A DNA stretch of 61,870 nt, the filler included, from Dugesia japonica (Eukaryota): the NCBI GenBank assembly GCA_001938525.1. It is 6 parts of 6 records of this genome, joined end to end, with 100 filler letters (N's around TTAATTAATTAA, not from the genome) between each part and the next. Parts side by side here need not be neighbours in the genome. Positions count along the whole stretch, not along the records: positions 1 to 8,960 come from MQRL01632681.1; 5 more parts are not named here. The stretch is one strand, 5' to 3'. The position numbers and the translations under genes were made by a program. Shown piece after piece: positions 1-8,960 of this stretch. The notes under the pieces are model-generated. The model ran no database searches. It was not told where the DNA came from and was given only the letters and a program-made list of their open reading frames with translations. The stretch's first letter is position 1. Each line of letters opens with the position of its first letter.

Positions 1-827
1 TTAAATATGTAAATTAAAAAAAGACAAAATTATCGAATTTCTTTCATTAATTTTCCCTAACGTAAATACTACAACAAATAAAATCAAGATATCTGTTTTA
101 AAATATTTCACTAAATGGAAAGTCAAATCAAATTCGAAAAAAAACTGTAAATTTNTTTTAACAAAACAAAGAACTAGTTATGAATGTCAAAAAATTTAAT
201 ATTTTAACTAAATAATAATCCTTATAAATAGTTTATTAAATTAATCATAAAAGGAAAATTATTGAATCAGAAATGGAATGTGAAATTGAATTAAAAATAG
301 AATATGCAAAAGAAAAATAATCAATATACATAATTCACCATGTATGTTTGTATGACTATAACGCTTCAATTAAACAAAATATTTAAAACATAAATTTTAA
401 GCTTATAAATTATAAGCATATAAATTTTAAGGATAAAAATTATAAACACTTCAACTAAATGAATTATTGAATTGAAGGAAACTGTGGATTTTCATTTAAA
501 AAAGTGGTTTTTAAAAATGTTTTTATTAAAAAAAATATGAAAAAGAAAAGATAAAATTAATTCTCTTCCATCATTTTTGACGGGTTACATCTAGTTTGTA
601 TATAAACAAAATAGATAAAAAAAACTCGGATTTAGAATTGAAATTTTATTTAAACGAATATTTAATATTTAATAGTATTTAATAATTAGATTATTTTTAT
701 TAATAAATATGTAAAATTTCTATTAATTATACATTACTTAAAATACTATTTCATATTTACCAAAATAAAATTGACATTAATTGAATATTAGAACAAATAC
801 AAAATTAAACTGTGAAATTATTTACAC

Positions 828-1025
828 CTTATAATCTGATCCTTTGGTAATATCAATAAATGCATTCGTCCATGAGGACATTTGAATATTATTGTTAGAT
901 TTAGAAGACCAAATTTCATCACTTTCACTGGAATCATTACACAGATGAAATATTGGAATTATTGAAAATGCACTCACCAAAGAACTGCATACTTCTTATT
1001 AACTCCAGCTCTTTTACTACAATCT
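828..1025 (-). CDS. Variable two-exon cassette 1 of a MAM-like gene (exons 978-1025 and 828-927)
   Basis: Canonical AG/GT boundaries and a 50-nt intron. Spliced: DCSKRAGVNKKYAVLC-ESDEIWSSKSNNNIQMSSWTNAFIDITKGSDYK, open frame. Confidence 0.85.
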
Positions 1026-1151
1026 CTACAATAGGTTAATTTTTATTAATAAATTGTTTTGATTTAAGTATTTAAATGAACACTTCAAGGAACCAAAAAA
1101 ATGTTTAGATTTAAAGAAAAACAAAATAAAGAAAAATTAAAAAATAATTAC

Positions 1152-1345
1152 TTTGAAATCAGACTTTGATTTTAATGTAACAAATGCAGAAATCCATTGA
1201 TTATATGAAGATGACGATTTATCTGACCATATTTCATCACTTTCACTGTATAATAAAGAGATTTATTATTGCCCTAAAACTAAAGATCTCTACATACCAT
1301 GTGACTGCGTACTTTTTTTTGTTGCCCACGTGTTTATTGCAATCA
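1152..1345 (-). CDS. Variable cassette 2 (exons 1298-1345 and 1152-1245)
   Basis: DCNKHVGNKKKYAVTC-ESDEIWSDKSSSSYNQWISAFVTLKSKSDFK; canonical splice sites, same phases as cassette 1. Confidence 0.85.
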
Positions 1346-2044
1346 CTGAAATGAATTTTTACATTTCTCAATTACTAACTAAATAAAGGAGGCTAGATAC
1401 CCAGCAGATATAATTTCATTTGCAATTTACTAGAAATTATGTTGAAGAATCATAAAAAGAAATAAATAAAATTGAGATTTAAAAATTTAATTACAAAAAA
1501 CTCCAAGCTTAACGATATGATGAATAATTATCAAATTTTCTAAAAAGTAAAAGCAATATTATTCAATTAAGTCAGTCATTTATAGTTTTTATTTACATTT
1601 TACTCTAGAAAAGAAATTATCAAAATTAAACTACCATCATAAAAAAATTAATTTAAAGTTTAACGAAAAGTATTGTTCTTAAATGATTACCAATATTTTA
1701 TTTAATAATTAAAATTTAAAAAATAATCACAATATATATTCGATTAAAACAAAGAAACCAAAATATTTTCTTTGTGTTTTTATTGGAGAAAAATGACCAA
1801 AAGACAGAAATCAAACATATGCAAAATATAATTATAGAATAAAACATTGAAATACTAATTTCAACAAATCTTAGCATTAAGAAATATAATTTTAAATTTG
1901 CAAATATTAAGAGTCTCTAAAAAAAGTTCATAAAAAAACATAACAGACAGTCTAAAATTTAAAAATATTTAATGATTTCACAATTCTACATGGTAATATG
2001 AGAAGAAGATCAATAGTAAAATTTTAATTTTTTATTTAAAAAAA

Positions 2045-2355
2045 ATGATTTAACGCAATTTAATATAAAATTGTATTGTAATATATTTCGACGGATCAAC
2101 CGTCATCATCAGACAAAATGAAAAATATGAGATTATTAAGTCTATATTATTCAAACAAAGATTTAAGCAATTTTACTGAATATTAGATAGAATAAAAATT
2201 CAAAGTTTTATAAAAAAATTTTAAACTTTGATAATATTCAGTATAATTACTCAAATCTTTGATTGAATAATCTTTTATTTTTTATTTTATCTAATGATGA
2301 AGGATGATTAGTCAAAAAATATCACAATAAAATTTCATTTTCAATGGCATTATTT
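2045..2355. repeat. Imperfect ~300-bp inverted repeat of two hammerhead-bearing (probably Penelope-like) 3' ends
   Basis: 2045-2210 aligns with the reverse complement of 2215-2355. Each arm carries a hammerhead-like motif pointing outward. Confidence 0.65.
2076..2116 (-). ncRNA. Minimal type I hammerhead ribozyme
   Basis: uugu-CUGAUGA-u-gacgg(uugau)ccguc-GAAA-uaua-UU-acaa: intact core, 5-bp stem II, self-complementary stem III region, stem I uugu/acaa. Confidence 0.8.
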
Positions 2356-2418
2356 AATATTTTCCAGACATTTGACTTTGTTTTACGCATATTTTTTGTA
2401 TTATTATATTAATAATGT

Positions 2419-2483
<65 letters not shown>

Positions 2484-2955
2484 NNNNNNNNNNNNNNNNN
2501 NNNNNNNNNNNNNNNNNNNNNNNNNNNNNNNNNATAGTATATTTTTAATGTTGCAAATCTTTCAGAGGAAATATAATATGAAATATAATATGATATATGA
2601 AATCACTGAAAACATATTTTACAATTCAAAGAGTAAATCAAATTTTAATCGTATTAAGTTTCAATAAAAGTTTCATTTTGAAGACGATTCACTTTATTTG
2701 TTAACTGTAGTTTCATTATCATTCAATGCTATTCACTTTATAAAAAAAGATTACATATAGTATTTTTAACCAGTTGGTATGAAATTTGAGATATTTTATA
2801 ATTATGACCCGTAAAATGGTTATCGATTTCTATTTTTAATATATTATAGTTATTATATACTGGATGTTTGATTTCAAAGAAAATAAAATTCTAAAAAAAT
2901 AGGTTTTCTCAACAAAATCTATTGAAAAAGAAAAATATAAATGAAAATATATATA

Positions 2956-3198
2956 CAGTAAGACCCCGCTTAACGGGAAAGATGCATTTCAAATTCTTAT
3001 AACCTAAATCGGGGTTCAATGCGTACATATGCATATATAAACCGTTTGCATCTTATAAATGTATATACATACATATAATACATGTATGAGCACAATTTGT
3101 ACATCAAAAAATAATTTCAGAAAATATTTTAAAAGCAAAACAAATTTACATCGAAAAAAATCACACTAAAAAAGGCAATGTTAAATGAGAAATTACTG
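2956..3198. mobile_element. pogo/Tc1-type MITE
   Basis: TA-flanked imperfect TIRs cagtaagaccccgcttaac ... gttaaatgagaaattactg. Confidence 0.5.
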
Positions 3199-3286
3199 TA
3201 TATTATAATTAAGTAATAATCAATAAAATATAAATGTTTTCGCTTCATATTTGTCAAAATGAAATCCAATAAAATGTTGTGTCTAC

Positions 3287-3490
3287 CTTAAAATCATTAG
3301 AACTCGGTAAATCAATCATTTGGGTTATCCATACAGATGATGAAATCTTGTTATCATCGCTACTAGTCCATATTTTATCGCTATCACTATATAAAGACGA
3401 TTTTTGTTTTAATTGTAAAATAATAAATTTAATAAAAATAACCAAATCAAAGATTGTTTAACTGAGCTTTTGTCTTTCTGTTGACAAGAC
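3287..3490 (-). CDS. Variable cassette 3 (exons 3443-3490 and 3287-3386)
   Basis: SCQQKDKSSVKQSLIC-DSDKIWTSSDDNKISSSVWITQMIDLPSSNDFK; canonical splice sites. Confidence 0.85.
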
Positions 3491-3619
3491 CTAAATATGA
3501 TAGCTATCGATAAAAGCAATAAAAGTACTATTTTATATTTCAAAATACCAGCAGAAAACCGAAAAATTTGTTCATATAAGAAATGAAAATAACAAAAAAA
3601 AATTAATGAAATGTGATAC

Positions 3620-3812
3620 CTTATAATCATTAGAACTATCAAGGGTTATTTGAGCCATATGCCATTTAGAAACAGATTCAATCGAAACCTGTTTAGAGGT
3701 CCAGATTTCATCACTATCACTGTAAAATATCTGATTTAATATTCACTTTCAGATTAACACTTACCAAGTCAAGGATTGTTTTTTATTACCTTTTACTTTA
3801 TTTTGACAAGCC
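3620..3812 (-). CDS. Variable cassette 4 (exons 3765-3812 and 3620-3719)
   Basis: ACQNKVKGNKKQSLTC-DSDEIWTSKQVSIESVSKWHMAQITLDSSNDYK. Confidence 0.85.
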
Positions 3813-3935
3813 CTAAAAACAATTTCATAGTAGTGTCAATCATCAACAATTATTTATCAAGCACACCGGATAGATACGCACACCAAATACATATTTTATG
3901 AGGTCAGAAATTTACATACATATATAAAAAGAAAC

Positions 3936-4155
3936 CTTATAATCTGTTGAAGAGGCCATAGTTAATTGAACTTCATTCCATTCATTTATTAAACGCTTTA
4001 AAACAACAGATTTTTCTTTTGACTTATCACTGCTCCACAACCGTAAACTATTGCTATTTAAATATTTACATAATATATATATATAACTATTCGCTAGTAA
4101 TGATTACCAGGACAATGTTTGCAATTCTGAATCACCTTGCTGATTTTTGCAAGCC
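3936..4155 (-). CDS. Variable cassette 5 (exons 4108-4155 and 3936-4053)
   Basis: ACKNQQGDSELQTLSC-NSLRLWSSDKSKEKSVVLKRLINEWNEVQLTMASSTDYK; carries a frame-preserving insertion. Confidence 0.8.
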
Positions 4156-4275
4156 CTAAAAATGGTCCAGTAGTAAAATGTGGTAAAAAATATAATTTAA
4201 TTTATATTAAGATAACAATCACCAAGTAAAGCACCAGAAGCAGATAATTAAAAAAAACCATTATGAAATTAATAC

Positions 4276-4363
4276 CTTGAAATCAATATCATTTTTAAGA
4301 TCAATTTTCGCAGATTTCCAAACAATTGATGGTTCATCACTGGACCATATTCTGTAGTTCTCA
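4276..4363 (-). CDS. Orphan second exon of a cassette
   Basis: ag|T-ENYRIWSSDEPSIVWKSAKIDLKNDIDFK|gt; no intact first exon immediately upstream. Confidence 0.7.
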
Positions 4364-4911
4364 CTTAAATCATTTCATATTAATATAATCATATTAAATA
4401 AACAAGACGGAAGTCACTTATCATGAAAAAGAATTATTTCTCAACATAAATAAAGTTTTAAAAATGATTTATTTATATTATTAAATTATTATAAAACGTA
4501 AAATTATATCATTCATCATACTTAAAAGAGAAAACTTAAGAATATCTTGTATTCACGTGACTCTAATTTAGTGTCACAACATTCTGAAGCTTTGGGAAAA
4601 ACTCGGTCAAATTAAGTAAATGTAATTAAAAAAAAGTTTCTTTAAAACAATTAATAAATTATAAGATAAAAATTTAAACAAAAAAGGNNNNNNNNNNNNN
4701 NNNNNNNNNNNNNNNNNNNNNNNNNNNNNNNNNNNNNNNNNNNNNNNNNNNNNNNNNNNNNNNNNNNNNNNNNNNNNNNNNNNNNNNNNNNNNNNNNNNN
4801 NNNNNNNNNNNNNNNNNNNNNNNNNNNNNNNNNNNNNNNNNNNNNNNNNNNNNNNNNNNNNNNNNNNNNNNNNNNNNNNNNNNNNNNNNNNNNNNNNNNN
4901 NNNNNNNNNNN

Positions 4912-4950
4912 GTTTTAAACGGACTATTTCCTCATAATAAGCGACAACCA
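4912..4950 (-). pseudogene. Broken first exon of a cassette (runs into an N gap)
   Basis: catatttag|T GGT TGT CGC TTA TTA TGA GGA AAT...: GCRLL*GN, with an in-frame stop. Confidence 0.5.
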
Positions 4951-5241
4951 CTAAATATGATATGAATATTAAATTCAAAAAAAAAACATTCTAAAATTTT
5001 CTGAAATTAAGAATACGAATTTGGTTTTATTAATTTAACAATTTTATTTTTCTATTAAATAAAATAATAAAAAACAGATTGATTTTGTATAATGAAAATA
5101 ATTTTTTATTAATACTAAAATAATAAAAATATCCATCCGTAAGGAGATTGTAAATAATCATGTAACGAATAAAAATATATTTATATATTTTAAATATAAA
5201 TATATTATATTTAATATTATTAAATATTATATAATATTTAC

Positions 5242-5290
5242 CAAGACAATGTTTCTAATTCGGAATTAATTTGCTGATTTTTTTCAAACT
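5242..5290 (-). pseudogene. Broken first exon, a recent duplicate of the cassette-5 first exon
   Basis: 5235-5385 aligns to 4100-4250 including the intron. The exon is 49 nt and its Cys codon has become TGA. Confidence 0.7.
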
Positions 5291-5827
5291 CTAAATGTGG
5301 TCCAGTAGTAAAATCTGATAACAAAAAATAGTTTAATTTATTCTAGATAACAATCACCAGATAAAAGACTAAAAGCAGCAATAAAATATCAATAAAACGT
5401 GGAAATTTAACAAAAAAAATATGATTATATTTACTGCTGAATTTGTTTTAATCATTTTGAAGAAATATCGTTCTATATAACAAAATGAAATATTGTCAGG
5501 TCTAATTTAGAGAAAATATGTTTTCATTAATAATCTCATTATAACAAAACTATTAGAACATAATGAGTGAAATTATGTTGTGAATGAATAAGACAATTTA
5601 TAAATTATATTTAAATTAACTTATAAACTGTCAAATGAAAATAAAGCTTATCGTGACATGAATAAAACGGATTTCATCAGCAAAAATCTTTAAAATATAA
5701 TATTTTAGTAAAAATAAATTAACATGTTTCATTTTTACCCACGAACAAGTATTATTTTATGAGATATTATTTAATAAAATTGAATACAATATTCATATCA
5801 TATTATCTTGTAAGTTATATTTCTAAC

Positions 5828-5875
5828 CAAGTAAAGGCCTGCTTTACGGCATCTCCAGAATGAGATTTACAAGAT
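5828..5875 (-). CDS. Orphan first exon of a cassette
   Basis: ag|A-SCKSHSGDAVKQAFT-TG|gt, 48 nt; partner exon not recognisable as intact. Confidence 0.7.
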
Positions 5876-5991
5876 CTAAATACAAGTGACATTGTAATTT
5901 AATTCAACGAAAATTAATAAATTTCCAAAAGCAGAACGGTTAATTTTATTTTGATTTAAAAAAATTAATAACAAATCTTTAAAAAAAACAC

Positions 5992-6194
5992 CTTAAAATC
6001 ATTTTGGACTGATATATCAACGTAAGCAGTATTCCAGCCATTATTAGTTGTTTCCGTCTTTTCACTTATCCATATTCGATAACTTTCACTACATGTGATA
6101 CAAAAAAACAGATAACATTTCATAAAGGAATAATTGCATCACTCACCATAGAAGAGCCTGCTTAACATCATTTCCTTCTTGTTTTTTACAAGAA
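5992..6194 (-). CDS. Variable cassette 6 (exons 6147-6194 and 5992-6088)
   Basis: SCKKQEGNDVKQALLC-ESYRIWISEKTETTNNGWNTAYVDISVQNDFK. Confidence 0.85.
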
Positions 6195-8333
6195 CTAATA
6201 TAAAAAAAACAAAGTCACGAAATATTTATGAAACGAAAAAAAATGAAATTGCCAAAAGCAGACAGAATTCGTTTTAATTTTTCCATTGAAAAAAAANNNN
6301 NNNNNNNNNNNNNNNNNNNNNNNNNNNNNNNNNNNNNNNNNNTATTATTGGAAAAATAAAAAGGTCTGTAAATTTTTAAGAATATTTGAAATAGAAACTC
6401 AAAATATCCACTGCGATTTTCATAGAAAATTTAATGGAAATTTGGAATTTTATTCTTCTCATAATTTAATTAAATACTTTTTAGATTGAAATCATTACAT
6501 ACATATAAAATATAATTTCAAATAATAGTGAGAGTTGTAAATTTAAAATTTAATTAAATTAAATAAAAGATATAAAATTAATGATTTAAAATAGAAAAAA
6601 TAATTTTTAGATAAATTTCGAATGTTTCCATTTTATGTATGATGAATAGATTTTTATTAAAATAACAGAAGATGACAAAATATTCAGAATAATGTTTTGT
6701 TTGAATATTGTAATTGTTGTGAGTTAGTTTTTTGAAGTATAAATTTGTGAATTATTTCGTTTTTTATAATAAATTCCTTAGATTTACAAAATAGCAAGTC
6801 TAACATAGCGATAATATGCTCATTTAAAAATTCTTTTGGAAGTATTATTTATTAATATGTCCATAAAAATACCATCTATATGTACAGTATAACTTTAAAC
6901 TGTAAATTATAATTGACAAAACAGTGGTTTACAAACGAGTGATATGTGAATATCCAAAGAATTCAAATATCTTGTTTCCAATTAAATTAATGATTGGAAG
7001 AACTTCAATGATATTAAGTATAAGTGAGATGGAAATCCGATGAAAAAAGTAAATAAATTAATGTAATGAAAATTAATCGAAAAATGTTGTCAATTTTTCG
7101 TGTTTTTCAATCATGTCTGAAGATTGGCATATTATAAAACATGATGTTTCTGGGGAAATTTTTTTTAAGAGAATTAAAAAATGAACTTGTTTCTCACAGC
7201 ATGCAATAAATTGATGATATTCCAGAGTAGATTAATTGGTTTTTAAACTCTATTGTTGAAATATTTGTTTATTTGTTATATAATTGAATGTTAATTATCC
7301 AAATAAAATGTCTGTTTAAATTTTCGTGGAAAACACTATTTAAAATATCTGTTATTACTGATTTCTAACTATTAAAATTTTGATTTTAAATATTAATTAA
7401 AATTGAAATAACAATATGTTAAATTTTAACATTTTAATTGGATTTTTTTAATCTTAACTTGTATATATTTTGATAATAATATCCAAATCAGAAAATTATG
7501 TTACTAATTTTTAAGCTTAAATAACTTATCCGTTTCTAATTAAAGACTTTCTCGACAGTTAATCAAAAAATATTTAAGTAAAAATCGTTCAGCCAGTTTT
7601 TTTTAAAAATTATTTTTTTTATTAATTTGTATTTAATTTAAAAATCTTTTCGAATTGAAACGAATTGTATTAATTCCAGTGAAATATTTTAAATTCTAAA
7701 ATCAAAGGTAATTAATTATTGAATACTCAAATAACCTAGACAAAACTGAATGTATTATAACATTATCGAGGAAATTATTAGAACATATTCAAAATATTTA
7801 ACTATCATTTTAAAATTAAAGATATTTTTGAAAATTAAGAAATAGAGTTATCTTTTACTGAAATAATAGAATTTTATGAATATGTCAATTGAATTTGAGC
7901 TTTAAAATAAGTAATGAAATATTTGAGATTAAAAAGAGTTACTACCGAGACAACTGGAAAATAGAAAACACATATTTTAGATATTTCTCGCATGATAATC
8001 ATGATCATTTTCAATTCATTTTTCTATAAATGTTAGATGGCAAAATATAAATTTTTATTTATTTTTAATTTCAGATTAAAAATTAATCATTTTCTAAAAC
8101 AAACTAATGAATGGGGCGAGGAATTTTGGCCGGTTTTAATTCCTCATTATNNNNNNNNNNNNNNNNNNNNNNNNNNNNNNNNNNNNNNNNNNNNNNNNNN
8201 NNNNNNNNNNNNNNNNNNNNNNNNNNNNNNNNNNNNNNNNNNNNNNNNNNNNNNNNNNNNNNNNNNNNNAATAAAGAAAAGTTAATTAATCAAAAAATTA
8301 TTTAATACTTTGTTTATTAAAAATTTATATAAC

Positions 8334-8525
8334 CTTGAAATCATTGTCAATGGTAATCGACACATGCACTTGATCCCATTTTCCAATACCCCTTCCCCCA
8401 CTGCTCCATATTTCAGCACTATCACTAAACCAACGAATAATAGGAAAATTACTAGCGAACCAGTCATTGATTACCAAGCCATAGTTTGTAATTTAGAATC
8501 GCCTAATTTCCGGAGTCTACAAGCA
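8334..8525 (-). CDS. Variable cassette 7 (exons 8475-8525 and 8334-8424)
   Basis: ACRLRKLGDSKLQTMAC-DSAEIWSSGGRGIGKWDQVHVSITIDNDFK; the most MAM-like copy (IW..G.G..W..V.V.I....F). Confidence 0.85.
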
Positions 8526-8665
8526 CTGAAGGGAATAAAAATTTTAATACACCCATCAAACGTAAATTCGACTACAAGGTATCTAAGCTACATGCTGAAC
8601 GGATATTTAATTTTAAAAAACAAAAACGAAATAAAAAAGTAGAAGTTTGACAAATAATAAACTAC

Positions 8666-8875
8666 CTTATAATCGGCTGTACTTTCAAGAGTTATGTAAA
8701 CATAATTCCAATTACTTTTTAAATCTTTATTAGTATTAGATTTCCAAATTTCAGAACTATCACTGAAAATATTATAAAATTGCTTTATTTTCACCAGAAA
8801 GTTTTAAACCAATGATATACCAACCATGTCAGAGATTGCAATTTTGCATCACCTCGATCTTCTTTACGACAAGAT
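8666..8875 (-). CDS. Variable cassette 8 (exons 8825-8875 and 8666-8762)
   Basis: SCRKEDRGDAKLQSLTC-DSSEIWKSNTNKDLKSNWNYVYITLESTADYK. Confidence 0.85.
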
Positions 8876-8960
8876 CTATAAAGAATCCCTATTAAAAATT
8901 TTACATCTCTTTTTGCAAACAAGGTACCAGAAAAACGGATTTTTAAATTTATAAATTTGT

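What the first reader, a model, noticed from the sequence alone, without database searches (positions are those of the whole stretch)
1085..8940. Shared intronic 'selector'-like motif ~45-75 nt upstream of nearly every cassette
Seen (transcript sense): atccgtttttctggtaccttg (8920-8940), atccgttcagc...agataccttg (8575-8604), ctgtctgcttttggc (6251-6265), ccgttctgcttttgg (5925-5939), tgctgcttttagtc (5367-5380), atctgcttctggtgc (4231-4245), cgtatctatccggtgtgcttga (3857-3878), tcggttttctgctggtattttga (3540-3562), atctgctgggtatctag (1393-1409), ttttggttccttga (1085-1098). These are GC-richer islands in otherwise unalignable AT-rich introns. They cover overlapping parts of a consensus ~AUCCGUUCUGCUUCUGGUACCUUGA, and several deviations are C-to-U, which preserves pairing to G. 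Established: Dscam1 exon 6 selectors pair competitively with overlapping parts of a single docking site. Inference: these are selectors. A docking site ~UCAAGGUACCAGAAGCAGAACGGAU should lie in the intron next to a flanking constitutive exon. I did not find it in this contig.
Basis: partly seen in the sequence, partly recalled or inferred. Interest (0 to 1): 0.88.

Follow-up and report, generated by a model that had tools for sequence, protein, structure and literature searches.

The report
Conserved intron motif before each cassette
A GC-richer 15-25 base element sits 44-76 bases upstream of every copy of a tandemly repeated two-exon cassette on the minus strand; it is the only conserved intron sequence there and looks like the selector sequences that choose one exon in Dscam-type splicing, but the partner site that would prove this is not in the piece.

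Summary
All ten quoted strings are at the stated places on the minus strand. A motif search with no prior input finds them again, at z 6-8 against shuffles. They lie 44-76 nt upstream of all ten A-type exons. A model of the motif finds no other clear match on either strand.

Once the motif is masked, the introns share nothing but splice sites.

The array holds 8 complete two-exon cassettes (A 48-51 nt, B 91-118 nt) and 3 decayed ones. Splice phases are identical, and A+B always leaves a remainder of 1 when divided by 3. Neighbouring cassettes therefore cannot be joined in frame. The peptide looks like the middle of a MAM-type domain, on weak evidence. The only relative found is a misjoined gene model from a monogenean flatworm.

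The selector reading fits the motif's length, strand, position and overlapping coverage of one consensus. Its defining feature, a complementary docking site, is absent from the 8.5 kb that can be read, and the flanking constitutive introns are not in the piece. No DNA from relatives could be fetched.

Verdict: a real and probably functional splicing element. Selector function is plausible but unproven.

The parts
8920..8940 (-). Motif copy 1 (upstream of cassette U1); the fullest copy
   Evidence: Exact string check; recovered without prior input; best match to the motif consensus
8575..8604 (-). Motif copy 2 (U2), with an internal insertion of about 7 nt
6251..6265 (-). Motif copy 3 (U3); the 6297-6342 gap begins 31 nt upstream of it
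   Evidence: repeat family D20 with copy 4
5925..5939 (-). Motif copy 4 (U4)
5367..5380 (-). Motif copy 5 (U5, before the decayed A exon); a weakened copy
4231..4245 (-). Motif copy 6 (U6)
3857..3878 (-). Motif copy 7 (U7); the most divergent copy
3540..3562 (-). Motif copy 8 (U8)
1393..1409 (-). Motif copy 9 (U9). No B exon lies within 1.8 kb upstream, so the motif belongs with exon A and not with a preceding B exon
1085..1098 (-). Motif copy 10 (U10); covers the 3' part of the consensus
8666..8875 (-). Cassette U1: exon A 8825-8875, intron, exon B 8666-8762
   Evidence: AG/GT boundaries, phases and translation; nhmmer exon models
8334..8525 (-). Cassette U2: exon A 8475-8525, exon B 8334-8424
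5992..6194 (-). Cassette U3: exon A 6147-6194, exon B 5992-6088
5828..5875 (-). U4: intact A-type exon with no B exon following it
5242..5290 (-). U5: decayed A-type exon (49 nt, stops in frame), a recent duplicate of the U6 region
   Evidence: (family D4)
4276..4363 (-). Orphan B-type exon (U5b) with no recognisable A exon or motif upstream
3936..4155 (-). Cassette U6: exon A 4108-4155, exon B 3936-4053
3620..3812 (-). Cassette U7: exon A 3765-3812, exon B 3620-3719
3287..3490 (-). Cassette U8: exon A 3443-3490, exon B 3287-3386
1152..1345 (-). Cassette U9: exon A 1298-1345, exon B 1152-1245
828..1025 (-). Cassette U10: exon A 978-1025, exon B 828-927
1790..1816 (-). Possible relic motif in the long intron between U8 and U9
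   Evidence: Ninth-strongest window against the complement of the consensus; nhmmer E=44 only; uncertain

Best explanation
The motif is a cis-acting RNA element that controls use of the 3' splice site of each cassette, in an array where only one two-exon cassette can be kept per mRNA. The most likely mechanism is that each copy is a selector. Each would pair, one at a time, with a single complementary docking sequence outside this piece, most probably in the intron after the upstream constitutive exon, as in Dscam1 exon 6. That pairing would bring the chosen A-exon acceptor close to the upstream donor and release it from a general repression. The short A-B intron (45-62 nt) would then be removed by default, and the B donor would skip the remaining unpaired cassettes. 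Shown here: the motif, its strand, position and exclusivity, its overlapping coverage of one consensus, and the frame rules of the array. Inferred: pairing, the docking site, repression, and one cassette per mRNA.
For: Motif search with no prior input: z 6.2-8.1. The motif is present before 10 of 10 A-type exons, 44-76 nt from the acceptor and always on the transcript strand, with no other clear match in about 8.5 kb. Masking it leaves only exon ends and donors as shared sequence, and the A-B introns share nothing (z about 1). The element is therefore under constraint while its surroundings have diverged beyond alignment. The copies match different, overlapping windows of a roughly 25-nt consensus and tolerate internal gaps of 3-7 nt. 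That suits a duplex with bulges better than a short protein-binding site. GC is 36-53% against a background near 15%. Eight of the ten copies are the eight strongest windows in the whole piece against the complement of the consensus, at -17 to -31 kcal/mol. This test is circular and shows capacity only. Cassettes share splice phases, and A+B is 142-166 nt, always 1 modulo 3. The selector and docking mechanism, and the origin of selectors by tandem duplication, are described in PMC6071210. Multi-exon cassettes chosen by competing RNA pairings are described in PMC6191721.
Against: No docking site was found in the readable piece, including the 827 nt downstream of the last cassette and both 2-kb internal introns. 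The best windows beat shuffled selectors by only about 3 kcal/mol, and they are exons or donors. A motif model finds no credible match on the opposite strand; the only one is at E 95. Only 85 nt lie upstream of the first A exon. There are no expression data and no sequence from relatives, so neither mutual exclusivity nor covariation is shown. The excess of wobble-compatible changes is not significant. The element is pyrimidine-rich and would also suit a protein binding site.
Confidence: 0.45

Rival explanations
1. The motif is an intronic splicing silencer or enhancer read by a protein, for example a pyrimidine-tract-binding or hnRNP-type repressor. It would keep each A-exon acceptor off by default, with no RNA-RNA pairing to a docking site. 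This role could also exist alongside selector function.
For: 17 of the 25 consensus letters are pyrimidines, with UCU/CUU-type runs. The motif lies at a fixed short distance upstream of the acceptor. No complementary site is in the piece. The inter-cassette introns of 116-140 nt are long enough to be spliced, so a repressor is needed in any case. From established knowledge, a repressor (hrp36) is part of the Dscam exon 6 model; PMC6071210 summarises this.
Against: No short core is shared by all ten copies. U2 and U7 lack the TGG core, U1 and U10 lack CTGC, and several copies lack the CCGT or CCTTGA ends. The conserved span of 15-25 nt, with internal gaps, is longer than a usual single protein site.
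Confidence: 0.3
2. The 3' half of the motif (GGTACCTTGA) pairs with a 5' splice site. Its complement reads TCAAG|GTACC, like the ends of the B exons (..TTCAAG|GTA, ..TATAAG|GTA). It would mask or tether a donor, either that of the preceding B exon or that of the upstream constitutive exon.
For: B-exon donors recur among the windows that pair best with the real motifs relative to shuffled ones (4251-4286, 8649-8684, 813-860). The B-exon end plus donor is the only other shared element in the inter-cassette introns. The U1 B donor and the U2 motif can form a duplex of -9.9 kcal/mol.
Against: The other adjacent pairs are weak, at -2.6 to -7.2 kcal/mol. Pairs from the same unit do no better than pairs from different units (permutation p 0.78). 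The 5' two-thirds of the motif has no complement next to any donor seen. Masking the B donor would also block the splice that the cassette needs. U3, U4, U5 and U6 lack the CCTTGA part.
Confidence: 0.12
3. The motif is neutral leftover similarity from the tandem duplications that built the array and has no function.
For: The cassettes are paralogues. The U5/U6 pair still aligns over 100 nt of intron (family D4).
Against: Outside that one recent pair, the rest of each intron shares nothing above shuffles. With the motif masked, the only hit is the exon end. The A-B introns give z about 1. Meanwhile the exons themselves have diverged to 28-47% peptide identity. Ten separate survivals of the same GC-rich stretch in 15% GC introns are not expected without selection.
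Confidence: 0.05
4. The motif is the 3' end of a small extra exon, either a micro-exon or a non-coding leader from a promoter of its own. Its donor would be at the TG|GT inside the motif, and it would splice to exon A across an intron of about 50 nt.
For: Seven copies hold G|GT, and the distance from it to the A acceptor resembles the A-B intron length.
Against: U3 and U4 have GC or GA at that place, and U2 has no such site. Gaps of 1-8 nt between copies rule out a conserved reading frame. U1 has no AG in the 33 nt upstream to serve as an acceptor. A exons begin with a split codon behind a normal pyrimidine tract and AG, and have no conserved start codon.
Confidence: 0.03

Closest known systems
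Selector sequences and docking site of the Dscam1 exon 6 cluster (competing RNA pairings; variable-window binding; PMC6071210, PMC1431710)
   Same: A tandem array of homologous alternative units, with one conserved intronic element upstream of each unit on the transcript strand. The copies match overlapping parts of one longer consensus, and the surrounding introns cannot otherwise be aligned.
   Different: No docking site has been seen. Each unit is a pair of exons with a 45-62 nt intron, not a single exon. The product is a MAM-like segment, not half an Ig domain. There are far fewer units (8 intact in the piece). The only relative found is from a flatworm. No evidence from transcripts or from other species is available.
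Multi-exon alternative cassettes chosen by competing RNA pairings at 3' variable regions (Drosophila PGRP-LC, CG42235, pipe; PMC6191721)
   Same: Tandem cassettes of two or more exons each, with a selector-like element duplicated together with each cassette.
   Different: Those cassettes are terminal, each with its own 3' end. Here every B exon stays open to its last codon and ends at a GT donor, so the cassettes are internal.
Arrays of 5' cassettes with alternative promoters (chelicerate sDscam, vertebrate clustered protocadherins; PMC9258826)
   Same: Tandem, sometimes multi-exon, variable cassettes, each preceded by a conserved short element.
   Different: Those elements are promoter elements in front of first exons. 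Here exon A starts at an AG acceptor in the middle of a codon and has no conserved start codon.
MAM domain (Pfam PF00629)
   Same: The B-exon profile matches the IW...W..A.V.L...F.I stretch of MAM domains in a multi-MAM protein (E 7e-4). The flatworm relative matches MAM profile positions 87-135.
   Different: All scores fall below the curated cut-off. There is a second cysteine at the A/B junction, and the segment between the cysteine and the first tryptophan is shorter.

Membership tests
Docking-site/selector competing RNA pairing (Dscam1 exon 6 type) | Tandem array of homologous alternative exons or cassettes with conserved splice phase and similar length | tested here: met
   There are 10 A-type and 9 B-type exons, forming 8 complete cassettes. 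The phase is the same in all of them, and A+B is 142-166 nt, always 1 modulo 3.
Docking-site/selector competing RNA pairing (Dscam1 exon 6 type) | A conserved intronic element beside every variant, on the same side and the same strand | tested here: met
   10 of 10 A exons have it, 44-76 nt upstream. z is 6-8, there is no other clear match in the piece, and it is the only conserved intron sequence.
Docking-site/selector competing RNA pairing (Dscam1 exon 6 type) | Copies match overlapping parts of one longer consensus | tested here: met
   Alignment of each copy to the 25-nt consensus. This is descriptive, and the consensus was derived from the same copies.
Docking-site/selector competing RNA pairing (Dscam1 exon 6 type) | One docking site complementary to all selectors, in an intron flanking the array | tested here: inconclusive
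   None was found in the readable 8.5 kb. The flanking constitutive exons and their introns are not in the piece.
Docking-site/selector competing RNA pairing (Dscam1 exon 6 type) | Conservation and compensatory change of the pairing across species | not testable with these tools
Two metagenome scans found nothing. The other DNA collections hold no animal genomes.
Docking-site/selector competing RNA pairing (Dscam1 exon 6 type) | Exactly one variant per mature mRNA | not testable with these tools
   No transcript data were available. The frame rule (1 modulo 3) argues only against joining two neighbouring cassettes.
MAM domain (PF00629) | Score above Pfam's gathering cut-off | tested here: inconclusive
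   The B exons searched singly gave no hit. The flatworm relative scored 19.2 bits against a cut-off of 26.4. hhalign against a MAM protein gave a probability of 12%. The profile search hit a MAM protein at E 7e-4.
Terminal (3' variable) multi-exon cassettes, PGRP-LC/pipe type | Each cassette ends in a terminal exon with a stop codon | tested here: not met
   All B exons stay open to the last codon and end at a GT donor.
Alternative-promoter 5' cassettes, sDscam/protocadherin type | Each cassette starts with a first exon (start codon, no acceptor) | tested here: not met
   All A exons follow a pyrimidine tract and AG, begin with the last base of a split codon, and have no conserved ATG.

The most novel reading that the evidence does not exclude
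An internal array of at least eight two-exon cassettes encodes the variable middle of a MAM-like recognition domain and is resolved by Dscam-exon-6-style competition of selectors for one docking site. On this reading it would be a gene family, and possibly a phylum (the only relative found is a flatworm), where such a mechanism has not been described, which would imply an independent origin. A further twist is that the predicted docking sequence begins like an exon end plus donor (TCAAG|GTACC), so it might sit directly on or beside the upstream 5' splice site.
Probability: 0.2. Interest if true: 0.8.

Novelty: new variant of a known kind. Interest (0 to 1): 0.6.

Why it matters
Arrays resolved by docking sites and selectors are the best understood way for one gene to make many exclusive isoforms. 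All well-documented large examples come from a few arthropod genes. A new array would show that the mechanism arises repeatedly when exons duplicate in tandem, as PMC6071210 proposes. This one has two-exon units, a different protein fold and possibly a different phylum. Its short, AT-rich introns would also make it a compact case, because the control element stands out clearly. If the element turns out to be a protein binding site, it still marks the control point of a previously undescribed variable surface-protein gene.

Tried and rejected
1. Local hairpins. I tested each motif against its own exon A, the motif-to-exon spacer, the A-B intron, exon B and the B donor region. Pairs from the same unit never beat pairs from different units (permutation p 0.38-0.81), so I rejected this.

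2. Docking site inside the piece. I ran a raw duplex scan, a shuffle-controlled scan and a motif model on the opposite strand. Nothing turned up beyond GC-richer exons.

3. Branch point. The motif core has no A, and AG dinucleotides lie between the motif and the acceptor, so I rejected this.

4. Micro-exon or leader exon. Rejected; the reasons are given under the rival explanations.

5. Known RNA families and tRNAs. None were found.

6. Gene identity.
- Pfam on single B exons gave nothing.
- A PDB profile search gave nothing.
- A PDB search with the flatworm relative gave only a chance-level hit.
- A word-based protein search with an ORF covering exon B of U8 gave no candidates.
- The same search with the flatworm protein returned only that protein.

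8. Literature. Searches for a described MAM-type array of mutually exclusive cassettes, or for one in flatworms, found nothing relevant.

9. Step left out. Exons were searched one by one by reference.


Full report
**Layout.** The piece (1-8960) has about 20% GC. The gene lies on the minus strand. Translation of that strand and inspection of splice sites show two kinds of short exon that alternate.
- Exon A is 48-51 nt. It begins with the last base of a split codon and ends with TG.
- Exon B is 88-118 nt. Its first base (T, once C) completes a Cys codon, and it ends on a complete codon at AAG|GT (AAA|GT in U9).
- The A-B introns are 45-62 nt. The B-to-next-A introns are 116-140 nt where both ends are seen.

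nhmmer models of the two exon types find exactly ten A-type and nine B-type exons and no others.
- Eight cassettes are complete: U1, U2, U3, U6, U7, U8, U9 and U10.
- U4 is an A exon with no B.
- U5 is a decayed A exon.
- 4276-4363 is an orphan B exon.

In every complete cassette A+B (142-166 nt) leaves a remainder of 1 when divided by 3. Exon B ends in phase 0, while exon A needs two bases from the exon before it. Joining B of one cassette to A of the next would therefore break the frame. This is the arrangement expected of alternative cassettes, not of constitutive repeats.

**Gaps.** None of the four N stretches touches an exon or a motif.
- 2484-2533 lies in the long intron between U8 and U9, next to a (TAA)n run.
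- 4688-4911 lies between the decayed U5 A exon and the orphan B exon.
- 6297-6342 lies 31 nt upstream of motif 3.
- 8151-8269 lies 64 nt downstream of exon B of U2.

Continuity across the gaps cannot be tested from the piece. The cassette count is therefore a minimum, and distances across the gaps are unknown. I did not look up their letters.

**The observation.** A motif search given only the 140 nt upstream of each A exon returns the same sites. At width 14 the log-likelihood is 52.1 against 34.6+-2.7 for dinucleotide-preserving shuffles. At width 18 it is 64.2 against 45.1+-2.8. Dropping U5, whose whole intron is a recent copy of U6's (family D4), gives z 6.2 and 8.1.

The copies have 36-53% GC in flanks of 5-29%, and they end 44-76 nt before the acceptor. 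A profile of the ten copies finds no other clear match on the transcript strand. On the opposite strand it finds only one hit, at E 95.

When the motif is masked, the best remaining shared element is just the end of the preceding B exon with its donor. The A-B introns share nothing (z about 1). U9 has the motif but no B exon for 1.8 kb upstream, and the orphan B exon has no motif. The element therefore belongs to the acceptor side of exon A.

**The search for a partner.**
- A duplex scan of the whole transcript-sense piece against all ten copies picks out only GC-richer exons.
- After subtracting the energy of shuffled copies, the best windows gain only about 3 kcal/mol. They are exon A of U4 and U6 and several B-exon donors.
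- Each motif was tested against its own exon A, spacer, A-B intron, exon B and B donor region. Same-unit pairs never beat pairs from different units.

No docking site and no cassette-specific hairpin is visible. The readable flanks are 85 nt upstream of the first A exon and 827 nt downstream of the last B exon, and no constitutive exon is in the piece. The expected location of a docking site is therefore simply not available.

**Features that bear on the mechanism.** The copies align to different, overlapping stretches of the 25-nt consensus, with internal gaps of 3-7 nt. No short core is common to all ten. Measured against the complement of that consensus, eight copies are the eight strongest windows in the piece, at -17 to -31 kcal/mol. 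This measure is circular, and it shows only that such duplexes could be stable.

Deviations from the consensus lean towards changes that keep a wobble pair (C>T 10 and A>G 3, against G>A 4 and T>C 2). The counts are too small to carry weight.

The complement of the motif's 3' half reads like a B-exon end plus donor. Predicted duplexes with neighbouring donors are weak and inconsistent, so I keep this only as a minor rival. It is also a hint that a docking site could lie close to a donor.

**What the cassettes encode.** The peptide pattern is x-[S/A/D]-C-x14-15-C-[D/E/N]-[S/N]-x2-[I/L]-W ... W ... D-[Y/F]-K. Single B exons have no credible Pfam or PDB match.

A profile of the nine B exons was searched against 1.84 billion representative proteins and gave six hits.
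- One is a 251-residue protein (E 1.4e-6) that strings together four units of the same pattern, three with the cysteine pair and one B-type only. It is KAL3317620.1, a hypothetical protein of the monogenean flatworm Cichlidogyrus casuarinus, evidently a gene model that ran several cassettes together.
- Another is a fish protein named 'MAM and LDL-receptor class A domain-containing protein 1' (E 7e-4). The match falls on the IW...W..A.V.L...F.I stretch of its MAM domains.
- The rest are repeat proteins whose matched repeats I read by eye as beta-sandwich modules. This is my reading of the sequences, not a tool result.

The last cassette of the flatworm protein matches Pfam MAM positions 87-135 of 158 at 19.2 bits, below the cut-off of 26.4. 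My reading is that the cassette replaces the middle of a MAM-like jelly-roll domain. This is weak evidence. The source organism remains unknown, and nothing here ties it to arthropods.

**Comparison with known systems.** In mechanism the closest match is the Dscam1 exon 6 cluster, which has selectors upstream of each variant and a docking site after the upstream constant exon (PMC6071210, PMC1431710). The two-exon unit recalls the multi-exon cassettes of PGRP-LC, CG42235 and pipe, which are also chosen by competing pairings (PMC6191721). Those cassettes are terminal, and these are internal. Promoter-driven 5' cassettes (sDscam, protocadherins; PMC9258826) are excluded by the acceptor and split codon at the start of exon A.

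Membership of the selector class cannot be claimed, because its defining feature could not be examined. The claim that the motif works like a selector rests on anatomy and on precedent.

**Limits.** Both metagenome scans were empty. There are no transcript data.

**Verdict.** This is a real, constrained, cassette-linked intronic element. Selector function is the leading explanation (about 0.45). A protein-bound silencer or enhancer comes next (about 0.3), and the two are not mutually exclusive.

Noticed in passing
window 828-8875, minus strand: The alternative units are pairs of exons, not single exons. A conserved Cys codon is split across the A/B junction (TG|T, once TG|C). A+B always leaves a remainder of 1 when divided by 3.
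   Followed up: yes
window 5828-5875, 5242-5290, 4276-4363: The middle of the array holds decayed units: an A exon with no B, an A exon with stops, and a B exon with no A or motif and a poor AAG acceptor. This pattern suggests that cassettes are gained and lost over time.
   Followed up: partly
window 1790-1816 and about 1685-1700; also 3120-3146: There are motif-like stretches in the long introns. One of them is followed, about 90 nt on, by a sequence resembling an A-exon end plus donor. These may be relics of lost cassettes.
   Followed up: partly
P0003 (KAL3317620.1, Cichlidogyrus casuarinus): A flatworm gene model contains four units of the same cassette pattern in a row (three with the cysteine pair, one B-type only). 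A homologous array therefore exists in Monogenea. Its DNA could not be fetched.
   Followed up: partly
window 2146-2271: A 55-nt inverted repeat (80% complementary, 16-nt loop) lies in the long intron. It resembles a miniature inverted-repeat element.
   Followed up: no
window 2420-2483: A (TAA)n microsatellite runs into the 2484-2533 gap.
   Followed up: no
window 2935-3060: A GC-richer island of unknown nature lies in the U8-U9 intron. The only nearby RNA family match is a chance-level miRNA hit (E 0.81).
   Followed up: no
motif 3' halves (e.g. 8920-8929, 1085-1094) versus B-exon donors (e.g. 4270-4282, 8660-8672): The complement of the motif's 3' half reads like a B-exon end plus donor (TTCAAG|GTA). 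Predicted local duplexes are weak and are not specific to the unit.
   Followed up: yes
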